From IMG/VR virus record IMGVR_UViG_3300036715_000626, positions 62,001 to 126,000 of that record: a DNA stretch of 64,000 nt. One strand, written 5' to 3'. The notes below the pieces were generated by a model. The model saw nothing but the letters and a program-made list of their open reading frames with translations. It had not been told where the DNA came from and ran no database searches. Below are positions 91 to 26,743 of the stretch, piece after piece. The position numbers and the translations under genes were made by a program. Each line of letters begins with the position of its first letter. The stretch's first letter is position 1.

Positions 91-702
91 TTACAGCGAT
101 CCTCCGTCTGGGTCAGTTGGGTCGATTCCTCCGGCGATCAACCTTTCTACATTTTCCCAGGTATCAAGAACACTCAATTTATCGAATACGTCGAGTTCAT
201 TGTCCTTGTCACTATGATGGTAAGAGTAATGCATAGCATACCCTTCGCCATTACCATCAAACTGCAATACCCCATCCATTACCTGCATATATTCCACACT
301 CTCTTTTCCATGTTGTGGGTTATTATTTATATACGTGTCTTGAAATCCGTAACACATGTTACGTTGGTAGAGTTTATCTACCTCTGGATGTGCCATGATG
401 TATTGTTGCATAATTAGATTAGCGCTTGCAAATGCATCGTAGGCGACGGGATATATTACCGTTTGGTTCATATGTGAACCAGTTTTGAACAGCAACGCTT
501 TTGAAGCGTTTATAATGCTGCTGTCATTGAATCTGTTATACATAGTTTTCACAGTATCTACAAATCTACTACCGATGGCTGTTGTATTATCAATAGCTGA
601 TTGTATATTGTTCTGTAAATAGTTTAACAGATTACTATCAGGTTGTTTGTATAACATAGCGTTTAGTGCTAATTCTCCGCCCTTGATAGTATTTACATAC
701 AT
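91..702 (-). CDS. hypothetical protein (probably conserved phiKZ-like)
   Basis: 203 aa ORF with AAGGAGG RBS, downstream of an early-promoter motif. Confidence 0.7.
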   Translation of the reverse strand: MYVNTIKGGELALNAMLYKQPDSNLLNYLQNNIQSAIDNTTAIGSRFVDTVKTMYNRFNDSSIINASKALLFKTGSHMNQTVIYPVAYDAFASANLIMQQYIMAHPEVDKLYQRNMCYGFQDTYINNNPQHGKESVEYMQVMDGVLQFDGNGEGYAMHYSYHHSDKDNELDVFDKLSVLDTWENVERLIAGGIDPTDPDGGSL

Positions 703-809
703 AATATTAACCTCCTTGTGGTCATTTATAACCTTTCTACAAAAAAATTGTAGAGCTTTATTTAATAAGTCCGTTGCGCAACAGGCTTAGGATGGTTAGT
801 CCTATATTA

Positions 810-818
810 ATAATATAT
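810..818 (-). promoter_or_regulatory. putative early promoter ATATATTAT
   Basis: Repeated intergenic motif; resembles phiKZ early consensus TATATTAC. Confidence 0.65.
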
Positions 819-847
819 GGTTATAATAAAATAAAAAAATATACACA

Positions 848-872
848 TAGCTACTGGTATTACCAGTAGCTA
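848..872. terminator. palindromic intrinsic terminator
   Basis: TAGCTACTGGTA-T-TACCAGTAGCTA just after the stop of 898..1353. Confidence 0.7.
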
Positions 873-897
873 CATCTTTTATCAGTACATGGTGTAA

Positions 898-1353
898 TTA
901 TACCTTAGTCACATTAAGCAAAGTGAGTAGTTTAGTAACCATGTCCGGAGCTTGTTTTCTAAGCTGGTTGTTCTTATTAAAAACTCCAGCTACGCCATTC
1001 TTAACAAACTTATGTTTTTTGTCCTTAGGTATTCTATATGGTAAATTATCCACTTGTTGATAGACTCCCCAAACAGGACTATCCGTAACTTCAGAACACT
1101 TTTTAAAAGTACCAGTTTCTAAATTAACTACAATGCAACCTCTTTCACGTACCAACATCAAAGCTTTCTCTCTAGTAAAATTATCATCACCTGTAGTATT
1201 GATAACGTTCACTACGTCATTAACCATAACCTCACTATTACCAACTGAATCGGACCCATTTGTTGCATATAAAACATCTGCTTTACTACCGTATCTTGAG
1301 TGCAGTGTTATCTTTTTATTCTCAGTAAGCCTGTTGACTAATGCTGGTTTCAT
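898..1353 (-). CDS. hypothetical protein
   Basis: 151 aa ORF with AGGAAAG RBS, flanked by terminators. Confidence 0.7.
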   Translation of the reverse strand: MKPALVNRLTENKKITLHSRYGSKADVLYATNGSDSVGNSEVMVNDVVNVINTTGDDNFTREKALMLVRERGCIVVNLETGTFKKCSEVTDSPVWGVYQQVDNLPYRIPKDKKHKFVKNGVAGVFNKNNQLRKQAPDMVTKLLTLLNVTKV

Positions 1354-1376
1354 AACTTTCCTTTATTAAAAAATAC

Positions 1377-1412
1377 TGTAACTACTGGCAGGAAATCCTG
1401 CCAGTAGTTACA
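1377..1412. terminator. terminator of nvRNAP gene
   Basis: 17-bp inverted repeat overlapping the exon 2 stop, followed by a T-run on the minus strand. Confidence 0.75.
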
Positions 1413-1629
1413 TGTTAACTGTATTTAACAGTTTTGATATTGTATCATCTACTAGATTCTCCGAATCGTCGCTAAGATAATTAGATAAAATACTATTAGC
1501 AGGAGCTAATAAAGTTAAGTTACCTGATACGCTATATGGTTTGGATAAATCTGGGATATTGTAAAACGGTCTAAGTGTTTTAAACTCTTCTGTTAGAAGA
1601 TTATCTAACAAGATAGTGAAGTTTAATTC
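1408..1629 (-). CDS. non-virion RNAP beta' subunit, exon 2 (phiKZ gp56.1-like)
   Basis: ELNFTILLDN... continues the DFDGD motif of exon 1 in frame; exact 3' splice site uncertain (1629, 1632 or 1638). Confidence 0.75.
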   Translation of the reverse strand, partial: ELNFTILLDNLLTEEFKTLRPFYNIPDLSKPYSVSGNLTLLAPANSILSNYLSDDSENLVDDTISKLLNTVNM

Positions 1630-3484
1630 TCTCTTATTCACATAATACGTTACTATTACGTCGCGGCTTTACCCGCTGCTCGATCTTTCGACCGATGACT
1701 GTGTTTTACACAGAAAACCCTCTTAAGGGTGAGTAGACTATATCTTATTTTTGATTGTTTTGTGTTCAAGTCTTCTGATCTTAATATGGGGGTGATCAGA
1801 AAGACTCACTAATTCTTCTAAACTGTGTCTAAGTAAGTACGAGTTTATGTTTGATCTTGGATTACCAGCATCTTTAAATACTCCTAAATACATAGCTAAT
1901 CTGAAGTTACCAAATACATAAAATACTTGTTTACCTTCTTCTCTATTACTATCAATGACTTCATATGTAGCAGCACTAATATCTACATTGTATCTACTGT
2001 TTACTACCTCTTCTTCAGTATAGTTTTTCCAAGTAAAGTCATTAACAGATGATTTTATACCATAGCCTTTAATTATCCAAGACTCATTGCATGTAGACGA
2101 TTTAGCTAATGCCGTACTAATCCTGTGATTATTTACTTGGTTGGATACCGGCTCTTTTGTTAACAAGAAATCAGATACTTCATCAATAGTGTTTAACACT
2201 ATTTCTTCTTTAAGTGTATAATCATACAGATAGTAAAAATGATCTCTCTTGATATATGGTTTAGACAACCATGTTTCTCTTGCTAATATAACTTCTTCTT
2301 TATTAACACTGTTGGGTATTTTAGTAACATCCATAGTTGGAGTAACTAGATAACCCATGGTGTATATATAACCATCTCGATTAAGAAACTTAGATAAATA
2401 TCCAATGGACATACCTGTATTATAAGATACCAACATCATACTGTTATACATAGTCCATGTCTCATCAAGTACATCATATACCCACATCTCCACAGCAGCT
2501 TTACCACTGGTATTAACAGGTCCTAAAACAAACTTATCCTTTAGAGATATAATATACCTATTTAGAATAGGATACTTATCAGAATGTTTTATATGCGATA
2601 CGATAGCTAATGGATTGACATTCAAATATTTAGACATTCTACTAATAGACATAAAAGTTTTTTCAGTATTATCCAGTATATCTTTAACAGTGACTATTGC
2701 ACTGTTCGTCCATAACCCGCTATCAACTGCGTGATTGGTATTCTCTTTACGAGTATTCCAAGCCAAATTCCAAATCCTATTATTTTGTTTATTTCCATCT
2801 TCATGATTAACAGTTGGTTTATTTTCTGGATTAGGTATCCATGCTAAAGCAACCATTCTGTGTACTTTTCTAGGGTTCCTAGCTAAGGTATCAGATGTTA
2901 ATGTGGCGTTAACATAACCATCCGGATCTAGGCTTGTTTTTAAAAGCCCTCCAGTAATAACCCGCAGTCTACCTATATTACTAGCTTCGTAACCTTTATA
3001 CCCGAGCACTGGTTTCCAGAGTTCATTTTTTAATTCCTCCTCTGTATAAGGAATGTGTTTACTTCGTATTACCACTATATTCCTTTTTTAACAAACAACA
3101 CCCCCGTATTATTTGTTCCTTTTATAAAACAATCAAAATCCTTCCGTTTCGATTTAAGGGATTTGATACCCACCCACTTGGGCCCTACTCTACTCCGTTG
3201 AGTACTTATTAGTACCGAGAGCGTCTATAGCTCTCTCATACACTGTCGTGCGTCGTTTCGATAGTCGTTGAGCACATCTCTTCATCTTACATGCTAAGAG
3301 ACTTCGCTGCGTCGATTCCCAAATCCTGATGAGTTTTTACCATTCCTTTATTTCCATTATTACGGTTAAGGTTGTTATACTCTGTTTCCAGGTATAAGTG
3401 GTATCATCAAGCTCTAACGGGGTCCCCGCAATTAGGAAGGTTATTTTACTACGCATCACTGCGTAGGGAGACAAATTATTCTTT
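1630..3484 (-). mobile_element. group I intron (phage IA2-like) in nvRNAP beta', with homing endonuclease in P8
   Basis: P1: exon GGAGAU pairs IGS GUCUCC with the conserved U.G; P element AAUUGCGGGGA; Q AAUCGACGCAGC; R CUCAACGACUAUC; S AAGAUAUAGUCU; several P9 hairpins before exon 2. Confidence 0.9.
1738..3075 (-). CDS. intron-encoded NUMOD4-HNH homing endonuclease
   Basis: WKPVLGYKGYEASNIGRLR (NUMOD4); VHRMVALAW...VNHEDGNKQNNRIWNLAWNT (HNH_3); its TAG stop lies inside the intron S element. Confidence 0.9.
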   Translation of the reverse strand: MVIRSKHIPYTEEELKNELWKPVLGYKGYEASNIGRLRVITGGLLKTSLDPDGYVNATLTSDTLARNPRKVHRMVALAWIPNPENKPTVNHEDGNKQNNRIWNLAWNTRKENTNHAVDSGLWTNSAIVTVKDILDNTEKTFMSISRMSKYLNVNPLAIVSHIKHSDKYPILNRYIISLKDKFVLGPVNTSGKAAVEMWVYDVLDETWTMYNSMMLVSYNTGMSIGYLSKFLNRDGYIYTMGYLVTPTMDVTKIPNSVNKEEVILARETWLSKPYIKRDHFYYLYDYTLKEEIVLNTIDEVSDFLLTKEPVSNQVNNHRISTALAKSSTCNESWIIKGYGIKSSVNDFTWKNYTEEEVVNSRYNVDISAATYEVIDSNREEGKQVFYVFGNFRLAMYLGVFKDAGNPRSNINSYLLRHSLEELVSLSDHPHIKIRRLEHKTIKNKI

Positions 3485-4732
3485 ATCTCCATCAAAGTCA
3501 GCATTGGACGACTTAGCGATGAGACCCGAGATACCAATAGTGTTATCATAGGTATCTGTTTTAAACTTACCTATATACACTGCTTGTGATGAACCTTGTA
3601 GTAGACTTGGATTCCGTTGTGCTAAGACCATAATCTTTCTGTCAGGCGCTTCGTTAATGAGTTCCTGTAACAGTTCATCGATAAGCGGTATGTACCGTTT
3701 AACCGCGTCAAACAGCATGTTACTTGCTTTCTTATACGTCATTTTACGTTGATTAACCAACTTGTTTATAAGATGAGGTCTAAACGCAGTTACTCCGATA
3801 GCCCAAGGTACCCATATCTCGTCATGACGATGTTTACCAGGGATACTTGTAATAACTGATCTGAAAGTAAAATGTGATCTTGCTCCGTATACATGCTTAC
3901 GAAATAATCCTACTTTCTTAGTAATATACCGTTCATAGTAGTTATGATACAATGAAGCTAATTTAGAAATAACTACCGATGTATGAGATGCATTTTTACG
4001 ATGGCTTTGTTTCTCACTTGTAGAGTTAATCTTAATCCACGTCATAACAACATCAATAACATCCGATACCGCTAAGTTAATAAATTTACCTTTAGTGGTA
4101 TTTTCCATAACGAAGAGTTTCTTATTGATAATCGGTAAATAGTTACTGAAGATGAGATCCTTTTGATGGGTATACATGTCCAATAACAAATACAAGTTAT
4201 CTTGTTTATCGATATCTTTAAACTTAGCATGGTTCATCAGATACTGAATGATTTCAGGGAGTTTGATAATAAAGTTCTTATAAGAACGTTCTACCATAAT
4301 CTCTTTGATACCATGAGTAAAGTTTTGGAGTTCCACCGGTGGGTTATACATTGGATCAGTCATCCATCGTACATAATCGATTTTCTTATCGAGAATGTTA
4401 CGTAGCATCAACCAGTAAGCTGGGTTGATAAATTCTAACCCATCTTCTAATTTTTCTAACCAAAGCATAGGATCTACTTTTTCATGCACTTCTTTACAGA
4501 CAGTACCGCATGAACTACATACTTTTTCAAGTAGATAGCGACCTTTAAGGTTACCACAATCACAGGAAGGAATAGTAGATAGTATATCACTGTCATAAAC
4601 AGTAATCAGTTGGTTGTTAACTTCTTCGATGTCATCTACTGAGAAATGATCTAGGTTGTTAACGATTACTTTAAACCCTGTGGAGTGTGCGAAGAATTCG
4701 TCGAAATTGACTAAACGTTGTGTGATAGCCAT
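3485..4732 (-). CDS. non-virion RNAP beta' subunit, exon 1 (phiKZ gp55-like)
   Basis: Zn ribbon CDC...CSSC; RNPSL; catalytic NADFDGD immediately before the intron. Confidence 0.9.
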
Positions 4733-4816
4733 TATGTTCTCCTTTGACTTTAGATATTACCTTGCGCAAGATAATAGGAATACAACAATTGTTTATAGCA
4801 AAAGGTTCCTGCATAA

Positions 4817-4825
4817 ATAATATAT
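4817..4825 (-). promoter_or_regulatory. putative early promoter of nvRNAP beta'
   Basis: ATATATTAT with upstream A/T tract. Confidence 0.65.
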
Positions 4826-4850
4826 GTTTAAAAATAAATAAAAAAAGATA

Positions 4851-4879
4851 ACCCTCACAACACCTAGGTGTTGTGAGGT
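4851..4879. terminator. palindromic terminator
   Basis: CCTCACAACACCTAGGTGTTGTGAGG perfect palindrome. Confidence 0.65.
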
Positions 4880-4881
4880 AT

Positions 4882-4965
4882 TCATTGTAGATCACCACAA
4901 CCTTCTACAGGACAGAACCCTGTAAATCCTTCGATACGAGTTATTGTAATCAGCGGCTCTTCCAT
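4882..4965 (-). CDS. 27-aa Cys-containing peptide
   Basis: AAGGGT RBS; MEEPLITITRIEGFTGFCPVEGCGDLQ; lies between two terminators. Confidence 0.45.
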   Translation of the reverse strand: MEEPLITITRIEGFTGFCPVEGCGDLQ

Positions 4966-5012
4966 TGTAATACCCTTATTAATTATATCACAAATATACC
5001 AAAAAAATAATA

Positions 5013-5040
5013 GTAGGTAACGGGATGTCCCGTTACCTAC
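5013..5040. terminator. palindromic terminator
   Basis: GTAGGTAACGGGA-TG-TCCCGTTACCTAC with T-tract on the minus strand. Confidence 0.7.
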
Positions 5041-5050
5041 GTATATTGTT

Positions 5051-5533
5051 CTATTCGATAATAAAATTATCTAATATCTCGGTAGACTTTAAAGCAGATC
5101 TCTGGACAGTTAAGTTAAACTTTACTTTAATATACTCTTTAGTATTAAGAATCATAATACGCATAAGCACGCATATGAAATCATAATCCGATGGTAAACC
5201 AGGTAACTCATCAACAATAGTGTCAGGAAAATTAAGGTATACTACCTTAACATTTTTATGCGTTACAGCATACTCTATCCTATTAAGAAGTTTTTCCATA
5301 GAAGAAACTTCCGTTAGGATTAGATTCTTATTATTTACCTCGTCAACTGTATAACCGTGTTTGACGAAATCGGTACCGAGTTTATCTAAACCAGACATAC
5401 ATTCAAAATATACTGATTCTTCATTAGTTTCACGTATATTTTGAATCGCATCTTTAACCATATCCATGTTTGTATTTACTTCATAGTCTTCTAACAGATA
5501 GACTGTTATATTGCTAAATTCGATTTTTTGCAT
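5051..5533 (-). CDS. hypothetical protein
   Basis: 160 aa ORF with AAAGGA RBS. Confidence 0.7.
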   Translation of the reverse strand: MQKIEFSNITVYLLEDYEVNTNMDMVKDAIQNIRETNEESVYFECMSGLDKLGTDFVKHGYTVDEVNNKNLILTEVSSMEKLLNRIEYAVTHKNVKVVYLNFPDTIVDELPGLPSDYDFICVLMRIMILNTKEYIKVKFNLTVQRSALKSTEILDNFIIE

Positions 5534-5561
5534 TTTTTATCCTTTTAATAATAAGTATTAA

Positions 5562-5765
5562 CTACTTAACTATATCATCATAGATCGCTCTGGCTACAGA
5601 GTGTACTACAATACCACACTTATTAACATCCAAAACACAGCTACCACGTTCTTTTTCTTTCGTACGTGATATGTTAATGTATGTTACTAAATTACTACTG
5701 CTACATGCCGGACATACTTTATAATGTCTAGGAACTAACGCCTGACAACTATTACACTTTTTCAT
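5562..5765 (-). CDS. small zinc-ribbon protein
   Basis: CNSC...CPAC motif; AGGTG RBS. Confidence 0.65.
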   Translation of the reverse strand: MKKCNSCQALVPRHYKVCPACSSSNLVTYINISRTKEKERGSCVLDVNKCGIVVHSVARAIYDDIVK

Positions 5766-5774
5766 TGCACCTAC

Positions 5775-6476
5775 TTACATAATATCGCTTAATGTCGATA
5801 ACGTAATTAGATTAACTAAAGAACCTAATTCACTATCGCTATAGCTTTCTAACTTACTCCAGAGTTCTTCCAACTCAACTTTGTAATGCTCTACATATTC
5901 AGTATCATTGGTTATATAGCCAGTTCTACTGTATTTAGCCTTAAGATGATCGATAATGTACTTGATTTTTTCACCATAGGCGTCTAAAGAATCTTTAATA
6001 TCGGTAGGAAATTTATTAGACTTAACCATGCGTGAAATGATTGCCTGCAAATCCGGTCTACCTTTATCAGCGATTCTCAGTATTTTACTGTAAATAGAAC
6101 TTGATGATGTAACACTACTAGCTCGGTGCTCACGAACAGCATTCTCTATAATACAGAGTTCATCACTATTAAACATCTTTAGATATTTATCAGAGATATT
6201 TTTAACATAATCACCAGCTAAATCATGATGTTCCTTACGATTTTCATAAACTTTGATATCGTGAAGATACGCACACATGAAAATAATATGGTAATCGATT
6301 GAAGGTGATTTTAGTTTACACGCTAGCATAGCCATATTTTTATAAACATCATCTGCGTGATCGATCTGATGACCTAGATCGTTATGTATATAAAAGGTAT
6401 GTCTATAGTACTCCCTGGCTTCTTTTTGCCATTGATTTCTAAAATACGCCTCTATGGGTATATTTCTATTGCTCAT
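5775..6476 (-). CDS. HD-domain phosphohydrolase
   Basis: H..DH, LHDI, HR, IAD motifs. Confidence 0.85.
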   Translation of the reverse strand: MSNRNIPIEAYFRNQWQKEAREYYRHTFYIHNDLGHQIDHADDVYKNMAMLACKLKSPSIDYHIIFMCAYLHDIKVYENRKEHHDLAGDYVKNISDKYLKMFNSDELCIIENAVREHRASSVTSSSSIYSKILRIADKGRPDLQAIISRMVKSNKFPTDIKDSLDAYGEKIKYIIDHLKAKYSRTGYITNDTEYVEHYKVELEELWSKLESYSDSELGSLVNLITLSTLSDIM

Positions 6477-6505
6477 GATTTTCCTTTAAGTCTTTAAGAT
6501 AAGAT

Positions 6506-6549
6506 ATGTCTATACCAGGATACCGATTACGGTATCCTGGTATAGACAT
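6506..6549. terminator. long palindromic terminator closing the non-coding locus
   Basis: 20-bp inverted repeat ATGTCTATACCAGGATACCG / CGGTATCCTGGTATAGACAT. Confidence 0.7.
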
Positions 6550-6563
6550 CAGTAAAAAATATT

Positions 6564-6940
6564 CAAATCCCGGAGTGCGCCCGAGATTTGGTTTAAAAAG
6601 GGGCAGCATATTTTTTATTATACTCTCCGTAAGACTTAACTATCGGAGAGTCCAGAGTTTCTTTTATCGCTAAGTATATCTCAACTACAGCGGTGAATAC
6701 ATCTGAATTGTTTTCTAATTGAAGCGTCCAACAATTAGAAACACTTAAACAGTTTAAATATCCGTGAGTTATCGAACGCGTAAGGCGTAAACCCGATACC
6801 GATACTACATCGCGATGAGGTAGCCTGACCAACCGCGAAATACCGGCAACGAATACTTAAATAAACTGTTTAAATGGGGTCTATCACGCGCCGTTTAACG
6901 CCGGCCAATAAGCCGGCTGATCGGCACGTATAGAACACCA
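6564..6940 (-). ncRNA. candidate large structured ncRNA
   Basis: GC-enriched; nested helices with many G.U pairs on the minus strand; no credible RBS-led ORF. Confidence 0.55.
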
Positions 6941-7049
6941 GTCAATGTTAATATAACACTCAATGGTATTCTTATGTTATCCACTCGACTAATACTTATT
7001 GTACCGTCAAGCTTTTCGAATATGATGCATTTCATTTCTAACTGATAAC

Positions 7050-7123
7050 TGGTTAGACTAGACAGATTCAAACTGTCGACCTCTGTAGGGTGATACAGTG
7101 CTCTATCGCTGAGCTATAGCCTT
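7050..7123 (-). tRNA. tRNA-like RNA with CCA end and a non-canonical 6-nt anticodon loop
   Basis: AAGGCTA/TAGTCTA acceptor, GCTC/GAGC D stem, CTGTA-TCACCC-TACAG, GACAG-TTTGAAT-CTGTC, ACCA end. Confidence 0.75.
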
Positions 7124-7223
7124 GTATGTTGTCATACAGGCTTGCAATTCCTACATTGTCAGATTTTTGTCTGTGGGCCTGTATAACTGGTGTCATTACT
7201 GACATAAAAAAGTTGCCTGTGCG

Positions 7224-7314
7224 TGGTGGGTGCGGTAGGATTCGAACCTACGACGTTTCTTTAAATGTGGTCGATTATGAGTCGACAGGGCTCGACCGCT
7301 GCCCGTACACACCC
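7224..7314 (-). tRNA. tRNA with CAT anticodon (elongator Met or Ile2), long variable region
   Basis: GGGTGTG/CGCACCC acceptor, GTCGA-CTCATAA-TCGAC, GTAGG-TTCGAAT-CCTAC, encoded ACCA. Confidence 0.85.
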
Positions 7315-7699
7315 AGTATAAATACTTCCTGTGATAATTTGCAACTTATTCACAGGTTGTACTGGTAGGATATGAGCTGCATGTACTACCATTCATGCAG
7401 ATGAGCTGGTCCAGTTGACCCGATATAAAAAGATAGTTTGCTCAACACGTATCTTAACTTAAGTACACTCGATTATTGTCACAGCTCTAAGCAGTAACTC
7501 ACACAGTGCGTACAAAACATCTTACTCAAGGATGCTTCGGGTGACGTATATGTTGTTGAATACCAAAATGCTAGCTGGCGTTACGCCTAGGCTTTTCGCT
7601 ACGGTAATACGGACTATAACGAGTCCGTAACAAAAACATACATTTATCGCCACCACTCAATGCTAATAAAGCACTCAATGGTAACCACAATCTAATATT

Positions 7700-7708
7700 A
7701 TAATATAG
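7700..7708 (-). promoter_or_regulatory. putative early promoter of the non-coding/tRNA operon
   Basis: CTATATTAT motif. Confidence 0.6.
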
Positions 7709-7896
7709 GGGTAAAATAAACTCGAACTTATACGCAACAATAACCTACGACGAAACACATTAGTTATTGTGCATATAAGAGTGTCAACCGTGTACGTATA
7801 ACACCTATCAGTATTAAAGTTAATATTCATAGGTAGTATATTATGGTCATAATAATCTATTCTGATAAAAAATTATTGCATCACCATTACTCATAT

Positions 7897-7917
7897 TGAG
7901 AGGGAACATCCCTCTCA
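7897..7917. terminator. terminator after chimallin
   Basis: TGAGAGGGA-ACA-TCCCTCTCA. Confidence 0.55.
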
Positions 7918-7923
7918 GATCGT

Positions 7924-9786
7924 TTAATAACGACCGAAACCCATATTAGAGTATCCGGTACCGAAGTTCGGCCCAGCGCTAATATTTTGACGAGCAAACC
8001 CAGAGGCATTTGTAATACCAGTGTTTTGATAGTGTTGTCCAACAAGACCGATATTGGTGTTTTCTGTAAACACGATTTCTGGTTCGTAACGAACATCAAG
8101 ACCGGCTGCTGTTGCTGCGTTTGCAAGAGTTGTGATAAAGTCAGCTGTGAATGTAACACGGATAGCTTTACCAGCGATTTCTGCATCAGGCATGATGCGA
8201 GATATGACATCTACACGATTGATAAATGGATCAGATCCACCATTCAAATCACGTGGAAGTGATGAGTAGACATATTTGTTCATAACCGCGGTATCACCAT
8301 TTTTAGCGCATACGAATGCCAAGTCGACATCACGGATATCGCGCTCACCAGATTTATCAGCCCAAACACCAGTAGGTACAACAACACCAGAAGTAGCGAA
8401 GATGTTACCGATTGGGAAATCTGATGGGAAGTTACCATCTGTCAACCAGTTAGCTGCTGCGATAAGCTCTTTAGCCGCTGCTGTTTTGTTTTCGTTGTTA
8501 CCCGGTTGGGCCGCCTGTGAGAATATCGAAAGATATGATGTTTGTGGTCCGAATGACGGAATATCCAAAGATACTACCGGCGCAAGACTGAACATTTGAC
8601 CAATGATCCCGTAGATTTCATCTGTGGTATTTTTCTTACTTGTAAGATCAAGTACCGCGCCGATACCATTAGGATTACCTTCAAGGTTGGTGATCATGTT
8701 CAATACACCTGGGGTACGATCGTTACGTGGAGTAAGAGCTGCCATCCACATATTCTTTTGAGTCATAACCATACCGGCGATCAAACCAAGAAGTGCGAAA
8801 CCTGTTGTAGGCATAGCCACCGCATCACTTGTAATCACAATATGTGGTTTAAGACGTAGTTGTGATACCATAGGCATACCTGGAACTTGCGTTTGAACAT
8901 TGTCAGGAATAGCATCGATATAACCAGAAACCGCAGCAAGTGTTTGACGACCAGTGTCAGCGTTCAACGAATGGAATTGTTGTTGTGTGTTAACACGTAA
9001 CAATTCGATACGCCAGTCTGTACGTACTGGGCGACCTGATTCATCACGAGATACAGGGTTACCCATATTTGACTCTATTTTAAGCATTGATTCACCAGAA
9101 CGACCGACCGCTTCACGGATATTCAAATCACGGGTTGTGCCGCTCGTAAGAGCTGCTTCTACGTTCAACGCGTTGAATGCAATTGGCGCGATACGACGCG
9201 CAAGCGTCGCAACATCTTCATGTGTAGCATGTACGACAAGACCGTCAACGGTGACAAATTCAGTATTTTCACCGTACTCTTTAGAAAGTGCAGATACGAT
9301 GATACGCATCAATTCAGAATCGATTGCGTCGTCAGTTGTGAAGATAAATGGACGAGTATTTGTTTTAATCGCTTGGTTAACTTCATTTGTGATTTCGATC
9401 GCTTTCATAGGACGGCGACCAGTGTCCTCGAGAAGTAACGTATAGTAGTTAACTACGCCGCCGTCCGATTTAGAAATCACGATAGTGCTGTACGCAATAC
9501 CAGTAAAAATTTCTTTGTCAATAACCGTCACACGAGGACGTTGTGCGGTTAGAATTGGTTTGAACGTTTCCAACAATGCGTTACCGATGTTCATAGTATA
9601 TTCTGAACCTTGGTTAGTGGACATTGTGTAAATGTCACGACCGCCAAAACCTATTCCCATAGGGGTTTGCATTTTAGCACCCATATTTGATTTAAGATCT
9701 GCAACTGCTGCGGCTGTTTGCGTAGCTCCTACTGAAGCACCTGCGTTTGGTTTTTGATTGTTGTTAGCATCTGAGTTTACACCCAT
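7924..9786 (-). CDS. chmA: phage nuclear shell protein chimallin (phiKZ gp54-like)
   Basis: 620 aa; flexible N- and C-terminal tails; G.PVR.D motif; lies upstream of nvRNAP beta' as in Chimalliviridae. Confidence 0.8.
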   Translation of the reverse strand: MGVNSDANNNQKPNAGASVGATQTAAAVADLKSNMGAKMQTPMGIGFGGRDIYTMSTNQGSEYTMNIGNALLETFKPILTAQRPRVTVIDKEIFTGIAYSTIVISKSDGGVVNYYTLLLEDTGRRPMKAIEITNEVNQAIKTNTRPFIFTTDDAIDSELMRIIVSALSKEYGENTEFVTVDGLVVHATHEDVATLARRIAPIAFNALNVEAALTSGTTRDLNIREAVGRSGESMLKIESNMGNPVSRDESGRPVRTDWRIELLRVNTQQQFHSLNADTGRQTLAAVSGYIDAIPDNVQTQVPGMPMVSQLRLKPHIVITSDAVAMPTTGFALLGLIAGMVMTQKNMWMAALTPRNDRTPGVLNMITNLEGNPNGIGAVLDLTSKKNTTDEIYGIIGQMFSLAPVVSLDIPSFGPQTSYLSIFSQAAQPGNNENKTAAAKELIAAANWLTDGNFPSDFPIGNIFATSGVVVPTGVWADKSGERDIRDVDLAFVCAKNGDTAVMNKYVYSSLPRDLNGGSDPFINRVDVISRIMPDAEIAGKAIRVTFTADFITTLANAATAAGLDVRYEPEIVFTENTNIGLVGQHYQNTGITNASGFARQNISAGPNFGTGYSNMGFGRY

Positions 9787-11104: not shown

Positions 11105-11109
11105 GAAAA

Positions 11110-11180
11110 AAATAGGCTGGATTCGAACCAGCGACCGATAGCCCTTGCGGGCTATAACTCTACCACTGAGCTACTATATA
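11110..11180 (-). ncRNA. anticodon-less tRNA-like small RNA
   Basis: TAGCTCAGTGGTAGAG D arm; ATAGCCC-GCAA-GGGCTAT in place of the anticodon arm; GCTGG-TTCGAAT-CCAGC T arm; weak acceptor, no CCA, ends in a T-run. Confidence 0.7.
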
Positions 11181-16389: not shown

Positions 16390-16692
16390 TTAACTCTCCC
16401 ACTTAACTTCGGTTATAACTGCCGACTGTGTGTTCGGACAGTTATACATAATTCTACCTTTTTCAAGGTAAATCGGTTTTATGTTATACGGGTTCGCGTA
16501 GACAAAACGCGTATCGTATGTTAATTTAAATAACATAATGTACCATATCCACCCAATGGTGCCATGGAAGACATCATACCAACGCCCAGTACTTTCTTGA
16601 ATGTCGATGATATCACCAGTATCATTGACAACTATATTAAATTGTACACCCGAGATAGGGTCTACAAATCTACCCTTATAACATATTTCCAT
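16390..16692 (-). CDS. hypothetical protein
   Basis: 100 aa ORF with AAGGAG RBS. Confidence 0.7.
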   Translation of the reverse strand: MEICYKGRFVDPISGVQFNIVVNDTGDIIDIQESTGRWYDVFHGTIGWIWYIMLFKLTYDTRFVYANPYNIKPIYLEKGRIMYNCPNTQSAVITEVKWES

Positions 16693-16706
16693 AATACTCT
16701 CCTTAC

Positions 16707-17048
16707 TTATGCGATACGTTGTTTACGTATCGCAATGTTAGCGTGTGATGTAGTATAGATAGCATCTCTGATATCTAATACGTTATAATACGGCTTACGT
16801 TCAACTTTCCAGCCTTCACTTACTAGCCGAGATGATAATCCATTCAGAGGAACGTAAGTTCCTCCAAATGATGTACGTGATAGAAATACATCGCCATTGT
16901 CATCTACTTCTACGTAGTTAATACAATGGATATTTTCACCGATATCGGCACCTAATTTCACTTCTCCTGTAGGAGAAGTAAATACCCATAAACCTACAAT
17001 TCCGATTGTGCCATCTTTTTTATGGCTATCTCTAATAATTACAGACAT
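16707..17048 (-). CDS. hypothetical protein
   Basis: 113 aa ORF with AAAGGA RBS. Confidence 0.7.
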   Translation of the reverse strand: MSVIIRDSHKKDGTIGIVGLWVFTSPTGEVKLGADIGENIHCINYVEVDDNGDVFLSRTSFGGTYVPLNGLSSRLVSEGWKVERKPYYNVLDIRDAIYTTSHANIAIRKQRIA

Positions 17049-17083
17049 TGTTTATCCTTTTCTTTCTAGTTTAATCTACAGTT

Positions 17084-17092
17084 ATAATATAG
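17084..17092 (-). promoter_or_regulatory. putative early promoter
   Basis: CTATATTAT motif. Confidence 0.6.
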
Positions 17093-17132
17093 AACTATAA
17101 AATATTGGAAATAACAAATATGTACTTAAGTA

Positions 17133-25336: not shown

Positions 25337-26212
25337 TTGGAGGAACAAATGACAGTCGCAGACGCAATTTTACAAAAGGGTAGCGTATACGCAGGACACG
25401 GTCCTGCAGCTAACTTAATCTATGGTGGTCAAAATGGCCCAATGGCAAAAATAGGTATGAAGGGACCTGACGGAAAAAACTACGATGAATGGATTTCCAA
25501 TCAAGCGTATGTCCGTCGTAACATCATTCCTATCGTTCTTCGTTATCCTAAGTTCTTTGACTTTATGCCGGATAAAGATAAATGGATTGCCACGTACAAA
25601 GCACTTATTGAACTTCACGCACTCACTATTGATGGGTTAAGTTCTGGTCTTAGTGTTGAGACTGACGAACATCCTGTCGGTGGTGCTGGTGAGATGCAAG
25701 AAGAGATTACTAACGTAACTCGTGCTCGTAGTACACTTACATTTACCTACAAAGAAAAATCTGGTAAAGCTATTCAGAAGTTCTTGGATTACCTTATTCG
25801 TTATGGGTATATGGATCCAGATGCTAAACGTCCTTTGGTATCACAATACATTACTAAAGTCGCGGATATCAGTAATATGTATACTGCTGATTACTATACT
25901 GGTACGGTTATCTTCATCGAGCCAGATATTACACAGAAACTTGTAGTTGATGCTTGGTTATGTACTAACATGTTCTTTAAAGGGAATGGTGATCGTACAG
26001 GTAAACGTGACGTACACAGCGCTGGAGAAGTTCCAGAGTACAGCATCGAATCTTCATGTATCACAATGAATAATGAAGCAGTGTTTACACTTGCTGACAG
26101 TATTCTTTCATCTCTTACTGTTCTTACTACTCTTCCTGATACAGGAATTGTTGTTCCAAGTTCAGGAGTAGATAGCGCATTAGCTGCTACTAAAACCGGA
26201 TTTAATTCATAA
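25337..26212 (+). CDS. tail tube protein (phiKZ gp30-like)
   Basis: 291 aa directly after the sheath; W.SNQAYVRRN; EPD...AWL..NMF. Confidence 0.8.
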   Translation: MEEQMTVADAILQKGSVYAGHGPAANLIYGGQNGPMAKIGMKGPDGKNYDEWISNQAYVRRNIIPIVLRYPKFFDFMPDKDKWIATYKALIELHALTIDGLSSGLSVETDEHPVGGAGEMQEEITNVTRARSTLTFTYKEKSGKAIQKFLDYLIRYGYMDPDAKRPLVSQYITKVADISNMYTADYYTGTVIFIEPDITQKLVVDAWLCTNMFFKGNGDRTGKRDVHSAGEVPEYSIESSCITMNNEAVFTLADSILSSLTVLTTLPDTGIVVPSSGVDSALAATKTGFNS

Positions 26213-26215
26213 TAT

Positions 26216-26248
26216 CATACACTACATAGCATTGCTATGTAGTGTATG
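26216..26248. terminator. bidirectional terminator
   Basis: 16-bp arms, 1-nt centre. Confidence 0.7.
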
Positions 26249-26299
26249 TATCATTTTATCGAAAAAAATAACGGAGAGAGAATATCTCTCCGAAAGCAA

Positions 26300-26743
26300 T
26301 TACTTCAGCAACGCCGCTGTAAGTTCTGCTTCAAGACCTTTGATAAAGGTTTTACCGACTTTAGCATACGGGTCAGTGATCGCGACCCGTATAGTGGATT
26401 TTGTAACATCCGGAGCATCGCCGATACCAGGATAGGTATGTGAACGATCTACGGTTACCGAAGCTCCGCCACGTTTAGATGTTGTATACGGGAACTCGGC
26501 AATAACGCGGTTAACAGATGGATTATTTTCCATCTCTGTTTTAGCAGCGTTAGCCGCGGCAGTAGTACATGCTTCGGTGTAGTCACTGATGTGGTTAAAC
26601 ACTTTTTTCAGGGTTGCTTCATCAACATCAGTTGTTGAAACAAATGCTTCCTCGTCTGTATATTTAAGAGTGACGATTCCGTCAATCTCAGTCCGGTCGA
26701 ATTTTGTAACGTCCAATGTCACAGCTGCAGCTTCTTTAGGCAT
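26300..26743 (-). CDS. hypothetical protein
   Basis: 147 aa, AAGGAG RBS, highly-expressed-type codon usage. Confidence 0.75.
   Translation of the reverse strand: MPKEAAAVTLDVTKFDRTEIDGIVTLKYTDEEAFVSTTDVDEATLKKVFNHISDYTEACTTAAANAAKTEMENNPSVNRVIAEFPYTTSKRGGASVTVDRSHTYPGIGDAPDVTKSTIRVAITDPYAKVGKTFIKGLEAELTAALLK

What the first reader, a model, noticed from the sequence alone, without database searches (positions are those of the whole stretch)
6564..6940. Candidate novel large structured ncRNA (~380 nt)
Seen on the minus strand: ACGUGCCG/CGGCGCGU enclosing GCCGGC-UUAUU-G-GCCGGC; a >20-bp discontinuous helix UUAAACAGUUUA..AAGUAUUCGU / ACGGAUAUUUAAACUGUUUAA enclosing GCCGGUAU/GUAUCGGU, UCGCGG/UCGCGA and AUCGGG..ACGC/GCGU..UUCGAU; then hairpins GUUUCUAAUUG/CAAUUAGAAAAC, ACUCUCCG/CGGAGAGU and AAAUCUCGG/CCGGGAUUU. 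The non-WC pairs are largely G.U on this strand, which argues for RNA rather than DNA structure. I could not match it to RNase P, SRP, tmRNA or 6S. Large tRNA-adjacent phage RNAs such as GOLLD and ROOL are the nearest precedent.
Basis: partly seen in the sequence, partly recalled or inferred. Interest (0 to 1): 0.7.

Follow-up and report, generated by a model that had tools for sequence, protein, structure and literature searches.

The report
Hairpin-rich RNA behind phage tRNAs
An uncultured jumbo phage that builds a nucleus-like shell carries, behind two tRNA genes next to its shell-protein gene, about 380-500 bases of non-coding sequence that fold into a chain of very stable hairpins ending in a terminator; it is probably a new, lineage-restricted phage RNA, but neither its expression nor its function has been shown.

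Summary
The minus strand of 6564-6940 folds at -133.8 kcal/mol (z -6.7). The fuller unit 6554-7052 gives z -8.8. The RNA strand is the minus strand, the same as all neighbouring genes and tRNAs: it forms 17 G.U pairs against 7 on the plus strand. No Rfam family matches. The only ORF (79 aa) has no homologue.

The window is a chimallin-encoding (nucleus-forming) jumbo phage from microbial mats. The element closes a 1.45-kb gene-free tRNA/RNA island between the chimallin gene and an RNA-polymerase subunit gene. It starts right after a tRNA, runs through a conserved leader and a conserved hairpin (R1), and ends at an intrinsic terminator.

A second strain differs at 5.4% and 2.2% in the flanking genes. 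In the RNA it differs at 0.3%, apart from one replaced 50-nt arm that still folds. Helix substitutions keep pairing through G.U.

The main weakness is the nearest relative (61% chimallin identity). It keeps the tRNA, leader, R1 and a terminator, but its body is unrelated in sequence and architecture. The fold is a string of local hairpins, not an ornate GOLLD- or ROOL-like RNA. No RNA data were listed.

Verdict: a plausible new tRNA-operon-linked structured RNA of narrow distribution and moderate interest.

The parts
7924..9786 (-). Context: chimallin (phage-nucleus shell protein) gene, immediately upstream of the gene-free island
   Evidence: Pfam PF25677 at E 4.9e-10. 32 homologues all carry PF25677. 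tblastn hits the Goslar 'nuclear shell protein'.
7643..7690 (-). R1 hairpin, copy 1. A weaker copy 0 lies at 7796-7842.
   Evidence: R1 covariance model: 54.1 bits for copy 1 and 26.4 bits for copy 0.
7227..7314 (-). tRNA-Met (CAU) with a long variable-region insertion
   Evidence: Rfam tRNA 49.3 bits; ARAGORN.
7050..7123 (-). tRNA-like gene with encoded CCA. It is orthologous to tRNA-Val(UAC) of L015, but has a 6-nt anticodon loop and an A1.A72 mismatch.
   Evidence: Rfam tRNA 43.7 bits in the local search. ARAGORN does not call it. Aligned to L015 10622-10697.
6976..7049 (-). Conserved leader: helix GUUAUC/GGAUAAC enclosing a hairpin that starts GCUUGACGGUA
   Evidence: About 74% identical to L015 while the body is not alignable. 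Consensus fold with compensatory changes. z -3.1. The R2 model finds it only in the window and L015.
6928..6975 (-).
   Evidence: R1 model 60.6 bits. The model's only hits in the 205-kb genome lie in this island. Across 4 copies, 6 of 17 pairs show compensatory changes and 92.5% of cells are paired. z -5.2.
6880..6934 (-). D1: 13-bp helix enclosing the GCCGGC hairpin
   Evidence: -32.0 kcal/mol, z -5.4.
6743..6876 (-). D2: Y-shaped domain with a long A/U-rich closing helix and two G+C-rich arms
   Evidence: -46.9 kcal/mol, z -5.4. Substitutions at 6868, 6816, 6815 and 6765 in a second strain keep the pairs.
6765..6816 (-). Polymorphic patch inside D2 (arm B and the 3' strand of arm A). Two alleles exist, and both occur in run X2.
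   Evidence: 10 substitutions and 3 deleted bases within 52 nt. Both alleles fold to the same overall energy, -153.2 against -153.4 kcal/mol.
6709..6742 (-). H3: perfect 10-bp hairpin GUUUCUAAUUG/CAAUUAGAAAAC
   Evidence: z -4.0. The CRISPR-repeat-mimic idea was tested and not supported.
6651..6703 (-). Weakly structured segment
   Evidence: z -0.3.
6615..6650 (-). H5: hairpin ACUCUCCG/CGGAGAGU
   Evidence: z -3.7.
6593..6614 (-). Unpaired A/U-rich linker holding a CCCC run. L015 has a longer C-rich unpaired stretch at the same place.
   Evidence: Unpaired in the MFE and centroid structures. L015 sequence and fold.
6554..6592 (-). Intrinsic terminator: 11-bp stem at 6564-6590 followed by AAUAUUUUUU. 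This is the probable 3' end.
   Evidence: Terminator scan; z -4.7.
6506..6549 (-). Perfect 20-bp hairpin between the terminator and the HD-domain gene (starts at 6476)
   Evidence: z -9.6.

Best explanation
The segment is the last module of a non-coding tRNA/RNA operon. In one sub-clade of uncultured chimallin-encoding jumbo phages, this operon sits between the shell-protein gene and an RNA-polymerase subunit gene.

Proposed mechanism:
1. The minus strand is transcribed together with, or directly behind, the two tRNAs.
2. Processing of the tRNA 3' end (the CCA is encoded at 7050-7052) frees the 5' end.
3. The conserved R1 hairpin may be a second cleavage or protein-binding site. It is a helix of about 19 bp interrupted by mismatches, which is the format of phage RNase III sites.
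4. Transcription stops at the intrinsic terminator at 6554-6592.

The product would be a nuclease-resistant RNA of about 380-500 nt, made of stacked local hairpins, with a short unpaired C-containing linker before the terminator. By position it corresponds to the stable RNAs of unknown function at the end of the T4 tRNA cluster.

Shown here: the structure, the strand, the non-coding status, the synteny, the terminator, and the conservation between strains.
Inferred only: co-transcription, processing at R1, accumulation as a discrete RNA, and any trans-acting role.
For: - Fold statistics: z -6.68 for 6564-6940 and z -8.76 for 6554-7052 on the minus strand, against -4.19 on the plus strand. Six sub-domains are individually significant.
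- Strand: 17 G.U pairs on the minus strand against 7 on the plus. This is the strand of all neighbouring genes and tRNAs.
- No Rfam match at the gathering score or at E<=10.
- ORF79 has no homologue in the relatives or in 5.8 billion proteins.
- Island G+C is 0.40-0.46, against 0.24-0.35 in most neighbouring sequence; the chimallin gene itself is 0.40-0.49.
- A terminator lies at the 3' end.
- A second strain (runs X1 and X2): the RNA outside one patch has 1 change in about 360 nt, and the rest of the island about 4 in 888. The HD gene has 30 in 557 and chimallin 25 in 1112.
- All 4 helix substitutions outside arm B keep pairing. Three of them do so as G.U on the minus strand only. The replaced arm refolds, and the total energy is unchanged.
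- The closest relative, L015, has the same order: tRNA, leader, R1, a strongly folded body (z -7.75), then a terminator.
- R1 shows compensatory changes and an invariant G.U, and occurs only in this island.
Against: - No RNA-seq run holding the sequence was listed, so neither transcription nor a discrete product is shown.
- The body is not conserved with L015 in sequence or architecture.
- In L015 the sense strand is not the better folder: -94.8 against -101.8 kcal/mol.
- More distant relatives have no island at all.
- Many helices are perfect palindromes, which is typical of terminators or DNA sites rather than of ornate RNAs.
- The genome is structure-rich in general.
- Between-strain divergence is mosaic, so low divergence could reflect recent recombination rather than constraint.
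- The polymorphism test rests on only four substitutions.
Confidence: 0.45

Rival explanations
1. It is a cis-acting structured spacer, not a discrete functional RNA. The hairpins, two tandem terminator-like stems (6564-6590 and 6506-6549) and R1 would serve only to process the tRNAs, stabilise transcript ends, and insulate the early chimallin/tRNA transcription unit from the downstream genes (the HD-domain gene and the RNA-polymerase subunit). Any released RNA would be a by-product.
For: - Everything from 91 to 9786 is on one strand.
- Two consecutive terminator-like hairpins precede the HD gene, leaving only about 30 nt before its start codon.
- The body is replaceable between relatives, while the flanking signals (leader, R1, terminator) persist.
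- The helices are local and often perfect.
- Other strong hairpins in this genome are plain terminators.
Against: - About 340 nt of highly stable, G+C-enriched structure is far more than termination or processing needs.
- The body is nearly invariant between strains whose flanking genes differ by 2-5%, and its replaced arm keeps its fold.
- L015 lacks the HD gene but keeps the module, so it is not a leader specific to that gene.
Confidence: 0.3
2. It is a DNA-level element: a recombination or cassette-exchange hot spot, or a replication or packaging site. The palindromes would act as DNA, and the R1 repeats would act like the repeated promoter/stem-loop motifs that shuffle cassettes in T4-type phages.
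For: - The chimallin-RNAP interval is an insertion hot spot in this clade: tRNAs, small ORFs and an HD gene come and go.
- The body differs completely between the window and L015 downstream of a conserved R1.
- A 50-nt patch looks exchanged between strains.
- The L015 hairpins are strand-symmetric.
Against: - The window shows a strong minus-strand G.U bias, and R1 has an invariant G.U.
- Strain substitutions are tolerated only as RNA pairs on the minus strand.
- R1 has only 3 copies, all in one island and all in one orientation.
- No sigma-70-like promoter accompanies R1.
- No other copy of the body exists in the genome.
- The palindrome TAAACNGTTTA is not a genome-wide site: 3 occurrences against 0.8 expected.
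Confidence: 0.12
3. It encodes a small protein: the 79-aa ORF at 6593-6832 on the minus strand, with a TTG start.
For: The ORF stays open in the variant allele because the deletions sum to 3 nt.
Against: - No homologue in the related loci or the phage's own genome, nor in the 5.8-billion-protein collection.
- The only Pfam hit is below threshold and is noise.
- The start is TTG with no obvious ribosome-binding site.
- About 12 of 20 residues change in the variant patch.
- The ORF runs through several perfect hairpins.
- By my own rough estimate, an open frame of this length is not unexpected by chance at this composition.
Confidence: 0.03
4. It is a member of a described RNA family (GOLLD, ROOL, group I intron, tmRNA, 6S, RNase P, retron RNA), or a CRISPR-repeat mimic (an RNA anti-CRISPR) built on hairpin H3.
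For: It lies next to tRNAs in a phage, as GOLLD and ROOL do. H3 begins GUUUC and ends GAAAAC, like many CRISPR repeats.
Against: - No Rfam 15 match at the gathering score or at E<=10.
- ARAGORN finds no tmRNA.
- The H3 pattern occurs only as 5 isolated single sites in 185,579 prokaryote genomes, never as an array.
Confidence: 0.02

Closest known systems
Phage T4 stable RNAs 'species 1' and 'species 2' (rnaC, rnaD) at the distal end of the T4 tRNA gene cluster (from my own knowledge, not tested here)
   Same: Non-coding, structured RNAs of unknown function. They are encoded directly behind phage tRNA genes on the same strand and are presumed to be made from the same precursor by processing. Species 1 RNA is a known RNase III substrate, which parallels the R1 hairpin proposed here.
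   Different: The T4 RNAs are about 120-140 nt, against about 380-500 nt here. No sequence or model comparison was possible. Expression of the present RNA is unproven, and the host and phage lineage are unrelated.
GOLLD and ROOL large RNAs (Rfam; often in prophages or phages near tRNA genes)
   Same: A large non-coding RNA next to tRNA genes in a phage genome, with unknown function.
   Different: There is no match to either covariance model. Those RNAs have conserved multi-helix junctions and pseudoknots with wide phylogenetic covariation. This one is a chain of local hairpins seen in one phage and its strain variants.
RNase III processing hairpins of phage early transcripts (T7 R0.3-R1.3 type)
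   Same: R1 is a helix of about 19 bp interrupted by small conserved mismatches. It is repeated between functional modules of one transcript.
   Different: R1 shows strict sequence conservation (ACCAYURAGU ... AUUKANUGGU), which RNase III sites do not need. Cleavage is untested, and the host is unknown.
PeSL (promoter-early stem-loop) cassette-shuffling motifs of T4-type phages (from my own knowledge)
   Same: A repeated stem-loop motif that borders variable cassettes in a hyperplastic region.
   Different: There are only 3 copies, all in one island. No sigma-70 promoter accompanies them. The cassettes are RNAs and tRNAs, not ORFs.

Membership tests
Any Rfam 15 family (GOLLD, ROOL, HEARO, OLE, raiA, 6S, RNase P, SRP, tmRNA, group I/II introns, small ribozymes) | Score at or above the family's gathering threshold with its covariance model | tested here: not met
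   The whole window at the gathering score gives only two tRNAs. The range 6300-7400 at E<=10 gives only tRNAs plus chance microRNA-type hits on the perfect hairpin. The rest of the island and the L015 island also give nothing.
tRNA / tmRNA | Cloverleaf or tmRNA architecture within 6564-6940 | tested here: not met
   ARAGORN and the Rfam tRNA model hit only 7227-7314, 7053-7123 and 11108-11180. A 25-nt resemblance between 6869-6893 and part of tRNA-Met is 76% identical and may be chance.
Rho-independent terminated small/large bacterial-type ncRNA gene | G+C-rich hairpin followed by a U run at the 3' end, on the strand of the proposed RNA | tested here: met
   Stem at 6564-6590 (11 bp) followed by AAUAUUUUUU; z -4.7.
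Rho-independent terminated small/large bacterial-type ncRNA gene | Own promoter and a discrete transcript | tested here: inconclusive
   No sigma-70-like site lies in the leader. One lies in front of tRNA-Met at 7344-7315. The host and phage promoters are unknown, and no RNA run was listed.
Structured ncRNA family supported by covariation | Compensatory base changes across homologues | tested here: inconclusive
   For the body, no alignable homologue exists beyond strain variants. Four helix substitutions all keep pairing. For the R1 hairpin, 6 of 17 pairs are compensatory across 4 copies. For the leader, a few compensatory pairs are seen across 2 sequences.
T4 rnaC/rnaD-type tRNA-cluster stable RNA | Encoded at the 3' end of a phage tRNA cluster on the same strand | tested here: met
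   The order tRNA-Met, tRNA-like gene, leader, R1, body, terminator lies on the minus strand.
T4 rnaC/rnaD-type tRNA-cluster stable RNA | Sequence or structure homology to the T4 RNAs; accumulation as a stable RNA | not testable with these tools
   No model of these RNAs matched or was available, and no expression data exist.
RNA anti-CRISPR (CRISPR-repeat mimic) | Near-identity of a hairpin to the repeat of a CRISPR array in a host genome | tested here: not met
   The H3 pattern gives 5 isolated sites in the genome collection and no arrays. The host is unknown, so the test is not exhaustive.
Protein-coding gene | ORF with homologues, or conservation of the reading frame | tested here: not met
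   No homologue was found. The ORF does stay open in the variant allele.

The most novel reading that the evidence does not exclude
A sub-clade of nucleus-forming (chimallin) jumbo phages carries, next to the shell gene, an operon of tRNAs, odd tRNA-like genes and exchangeable, R1-hairpin-delimited structured RNA cassettes. Under this reading the 380-500-nt RNA is a genuinely new large non-coding RNA with a trans-acting role in infection. Candidate roles are a decoy or sponge for a host RNA-targeting defence or nuclease, or a regulator acting through its unpaired C-containing linker. A phage-encoded or host factor would recognise R1.
Probability: 0.15. Interest if true: 0.7.

Novelty: new member of a known kind. 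Interest (0 to 1): 0.35.

Why it matters
Nucleus-forming jumbo phages resist DNA-targeting defences and are exposed mainly through their RNA. Their own non-coding RNAs are almost unexplored; for phiKZ only one predicted sRNA is reported, and it could not be confirmed by northern blot (PMC8244752).

A large, stable, tRNA-linked RNA beside the most strongly expressed early gene would be a concrete candidate for RNA-level host takeover or counter-defence. The repeated R1 hairpin would be a handle for finding the factor that processes or binds it.

If it is only a processing and termination spacer, it still documents how these phages organise a tRNA island inserted between two core genes.

Tried and rejected
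- **Phage GenBank records.** blastn of 6300-7400 found no match.
- **Single-protein locus searches in IMG/VR.** Chimallin and the HD protein gave nothing. A chimallin alignment gave 2 viral and 11 metagenome loci.
- **nhmmer and blastn of the RNA against all related loci.** Only the tRNA, leader and R1 match, and only in L015, L016 and L017. Nothing matches the body.
- **Degenerate R1 pattern in IMG/VR.** 119 chance hits, none a true hairpin relative.
- **Leader pattern in IMG/VR.** One unrelated G+C-rich phage.
- **R2 model (leader plus R1).** Found only in the window and L015.
- **CRISPR-repeat mimic idea for H3.** No arrays found.
- **Antisense targets.** No complement of 15 nt or more elsewhere in the phage's own genome.
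- **Palindrome TAAACNGTTTA as a genome-wide operator.** Rejected.
- **More relatives through the 160-aa neighbour gene.** One lineage was found, without an island.
- **RNA sequencing runs.** None was listed.
- **First whole-window z-score scan.** It timed out. A lighter scan used mononucleotide shuffles.
- **eval_structure on the mirrored plus strand.** It gave an uninterpretable energy and was ignored.
- **Shared block between L018 and L019.** They share a block of about 75 nt, but I could not relate it convincingly to the window's body.

Full report
**What the window is.** The window is bases 62001-126000 of a 205-kb IMG/VR virus record with direct terminal repeats. The gene just upstream of the finding on the same strand (7924-9786, minus) is a chimallin, the shell protein of the phage nucleus. 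It hits Pfam PF25677 at E 4.9e-10. All 32 of its database homologues carry that domain. By tblastn it also reaches the annotated nuclear shell protein of phage Goslar and the corresponding genes of Burkholderia phage FLC9 and Bacillus phage AgentSmith. Near-identical DNA is held by microbial-mat and sediment metagenomes. The finding therefore sits in an uncultured nucleus-forming jumbo phage.

**Check of the observation.**
- The range 6564-6940 on the minus strand gives -133.8 kcal/mol, z -6.68 against dinucleotide shuffles. The plus strand gives -110.3, z -4.19.
- Folded separately, the sub-domains score as follows: D1 (6880-6934) z -5.4, the Y-shaped D2 (6743-6876) z -5.4, H3 (6709-6742) z -4.0, H5 (6615-6650) z -3.7, and the terminal hairpin with its U run (6554-6592) z -4.7. 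Only 6651-6703 is unremarkable.
- The G.U argument holds: 17 G.U pairs in the minus-strand MFE against 7 in the plus-strand MFE.
- One caveat applies. A coarse scan of the window shows a structure-rich genome (mean z -1.2) in which some coding regions and convergent terminators score as low. The island holds the 3rd, 7th and 8th most extreme of 638 windows, so it is exceptional but not unique.

**Anatomy and true boundaries.** A 1.45-kb stretch without credible genes separates chimallin from an HD-domain gene (5775-6476). Reading the minus strand, it contains in order:
1. A weak R1 hairpin (7796-7842) and a strong one (7643-7690).
2. About 330 nt of moderately structured sequence (z -2.8).
3. 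tRNA-Met (7227-7314).
4. A tRNA-like gene with encoded CCA (7050-7123).
5. A 74-nt leader (6976-7049).
6. A third R1 hairpin (6928-6975).
8. An intrinsic terminator (stem 6564-6590 plus U run).
9. A perfect 20-bp hairpin (6506-6549), followed by the HD gene start.

The unit 6554-7052 folds with z -8.76.

**Known families and coding potential.** No Rfam 15 family matches, either at the gathering score over the whole window or at E<=10 over the island. The only hits are the tRNAs and chance microRNA-type hits on the perfect palindrome. ARAGORN finds no tmRNA. The only sizeable ORF is 79 aa with a TTG start (6593-6832, minus). It has no homologue in the related loci or the phage's own genome, nor in the 5.8-billion-protein collection. 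It does stay open in a variant allele, so a small protein is not strictly excluded, but I rate it at about 3%.

**Relatives.** Chimallin homologues of 33-61% identity come only from metagenomes. I fetched their loci.
- Across the clade the RNA-polymerase subunit gene (the window's 3476-4732) follows chimallin.
- In distant members it follows within 70-500 nt, and cultured relatives have ordinary genes there.
- In a sub-clade a gene-free island of 0.6-2.3 kb with tRNAs has been inserted. This sub-clade is the window, L015-L017 at 61%, L018 at 52%, L019 at 51%, L003 at 48% and L154 at 54%.
- The nearest relative, L015, has the same order as the window: tRNA-Met, tRNA-Val, leader, R1, a strongly folded body (z -7.75) and a terminator.
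- Only the tRNA, the leader and R1 align, at about 74% over about 200 nt. The consensus fold shows some compensatory changes.
- The L015 body is shorter and unrelated in sequence, and its hairpin layout is different. Its sense strand is not the better folder.
- A model of leader plus R1 finds nothing convincing in L018, L019 or L003.

What is conserved across species is therefore the slot and its flanking signals, not the body.

**The R1 hairpin.** Four strong copies exist, two in the window and two in L015. They share ACCAYURAGU ... AUUKANUGGU around an upper stem that covaries (G-C/A-U and U-A/C-G). A G.U pair is invariant, and there are two conserved 1x1 mismatches.
- 92.5% of cells are paired and 6 of 17 pairs are compensatory; slid-register controls collapse.
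- A covariance model built from these copies hits nothing else in the 205-kb genome. It finds weaker copies in the islands of L018 and L019.
- The invariant G.U, and the lower scores on the opposite strand, argue for an RNA-level element.
- Its size (about 19 bp interrupted by mismatches) and its position between modules suggest a processing or protein-binding site. That is inference only.

**Population evidence.** Logan contigs of runs X1 and X2 carry a second strain. Its divergence from the window is as follows.

| Region | Differences | Rate |
|---|---|---|
| HD gene (5920-6476) | 30 in 557 | 5.4% |
| Chimallin (8057-9168) | 25 in 1112 | 2.2% |
| 3611-5011 | 10 in 1401 | 0.7% |
| Island, 7037-7924 | about 4 substitutions in 888, plus indels in A/T-rich spacers | about 0.4% |
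| RNA 6564-6975 outside one patch | 1 in about 360 | 0.3% |

- The patch (6765-6816, inside D2) carries 10 substitutions and 3 deleted bases. Both alleles co-occur in X2.
- When the variant is rebuilt, the MFE is unchanged (-153.2 against -153.4 kcal/mol) and arm B refolds with a new sequence.
- The four substitutions at paired positions outside arm B all keep the pair: C-G to U.G, A-U to G.U twice, and U.G to C-G. Three of these are tolerated only on the minus strand.
- This is compatible with selection on a minus-strand RNA fold. However, four events are few, and the mosaic divergence means that recent recombination could also explain the low divergence.

**Other ideas tested.**
- H3 looks like a CRISPR repeat, but its pattern occurs only as isolated single sites in 185,579 prokaryote genomes.
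- The RNA has no complement of 15 nt or more elsewhere in the phage.
- The palindromic arms of D2 are not a genome-wide operator.
- No RNA run that holds the sequence was listed.

**Conclusion.** The most likely reading (about 0.45) is a lineage-restricted, tRNA-operon-linked structured RNA of about 380-500 nt. It would be released by tRNA 3' processing, perhaps also by cleavage at R1, and ended by an intrinsic terminator. By position it is analogous to the T4 species 1 and 2 RNAs.

The main rival (about 0.3) is that it is only a cis-acting processing, termination and insulation spacer. DNA-level cassette or recombination roles (about 0.12), a small protein (about 0.03) and membership of a known family (about 0.02) are less likely.

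It is not GOLLD- or ROOL-like in architecture. Interest is moderate. It would be a new RNA family in a much-studied kind of phage, but its distribution is very narrow, the body has no cross-species covariation, and there are no expression data.

Noticed in passing
window 7053-7123 (-), 11108-11180 (-); L003 8420-8497, 9382-9454; L006 8341-8435: Several tRNA-like genes in this phage clade have 6-nt anticodon loops; ARAGORN reports them as 'tRNA-???' with 2-base anticodons. The window's 7053-7123 is the orthologue of a normal tRNA-Val(UAC) in L015, but it lacks one loop base and has an A1.A72 mismatch. They could be pseudo-tRNAs, or they could be decoys or variants that are insensitive to anticodon nucleases.
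   Followed up: partly
window 7227-7314 (-): tRNA-Met(CAU) carries an insertion of about 14-17 nt in the variable region, giving 88-91 nt in total. The orthologue in L015 is a standard 76-nt tRNA.
   Followed up: no
window 6928-6975, 7643-7690, 7796-7842 (-); L015 10044-10093, 10784-10832; L018 4823-4871, 5061-5117; L019 9914-9960: R1 is a repeated, covarying hairpin with conserved mismatches and an invariant G.U. It is confined to the island downstream of chimallin. It may be a processing or protein-binding site.
   Followed up: yes
window about 7514-7546 (-) and L015 10163-10189: A second small conserved hairpin lies upstream of tRNA-Met. Its stem covaries and its loop CUUGAGUA(A/U) is conserved. 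The hexamer UUGAGU also sits in the 5' strand of R1.
   Followed up: no
window 6506-6549 (-): A perfect 20-bp hairpin (z -9.6) lies between the RNA's terminator and the HD-domain gene, leaving only about 30 nt before the start codon. The HD gene therefore seems to depend on read-through or on a promoter inside the structured region.
   Followed up: no
window 6765-6816: A 52-nt patch differs by about 25% between two otherwise nearly identical alleles, and both alleles are present in run X2. The changes are not adenine-specific, so a diversity-generating retroelement is unlikely.
   Followed up: partly
L002/L004 9638-10245; L150 7641-8012 and beyond; L152 7100-7643: In several relatives the RNA-polymerase subunit gene (homologue of the window's 3476-4732) is split by an insertion of about 0.5-0.6 kb. 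In L150 and L152 the insertion is followed by an HNH/NUMOD homing-endonuclease gene. This looks like an intron, but there is no Rfam group I hit in L002, the only split locus scanned.
   Followed up: no
L018 5420-5500 and L019 10400-10480: These two relatives share a non-coding block of about 75 nt (UAUAGACCU, an A run, then ACGUGGU) with a conserved enclosing helix. It sits in the last part of their islands before a terminator and may be another RNA of this island family.
   Followed up: partly
window 3405-3611: A contig in run X1 skips 205 bases here. That would remove the 3' end of the RNA-polymerase subunit gene (which ends at 3476) and the adjacent spacer in that strain, or the skip may be an assembly artefact.
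   Followed up: no
window 26212-26300 and 16500-17100: Other very stable structures exist in the window. One is a 15-bp perfect hairpin pair between convergent genes, likely a bidirectional terminator. The other is strong local structure inside two small coding ORFs.
   Followed up: partly
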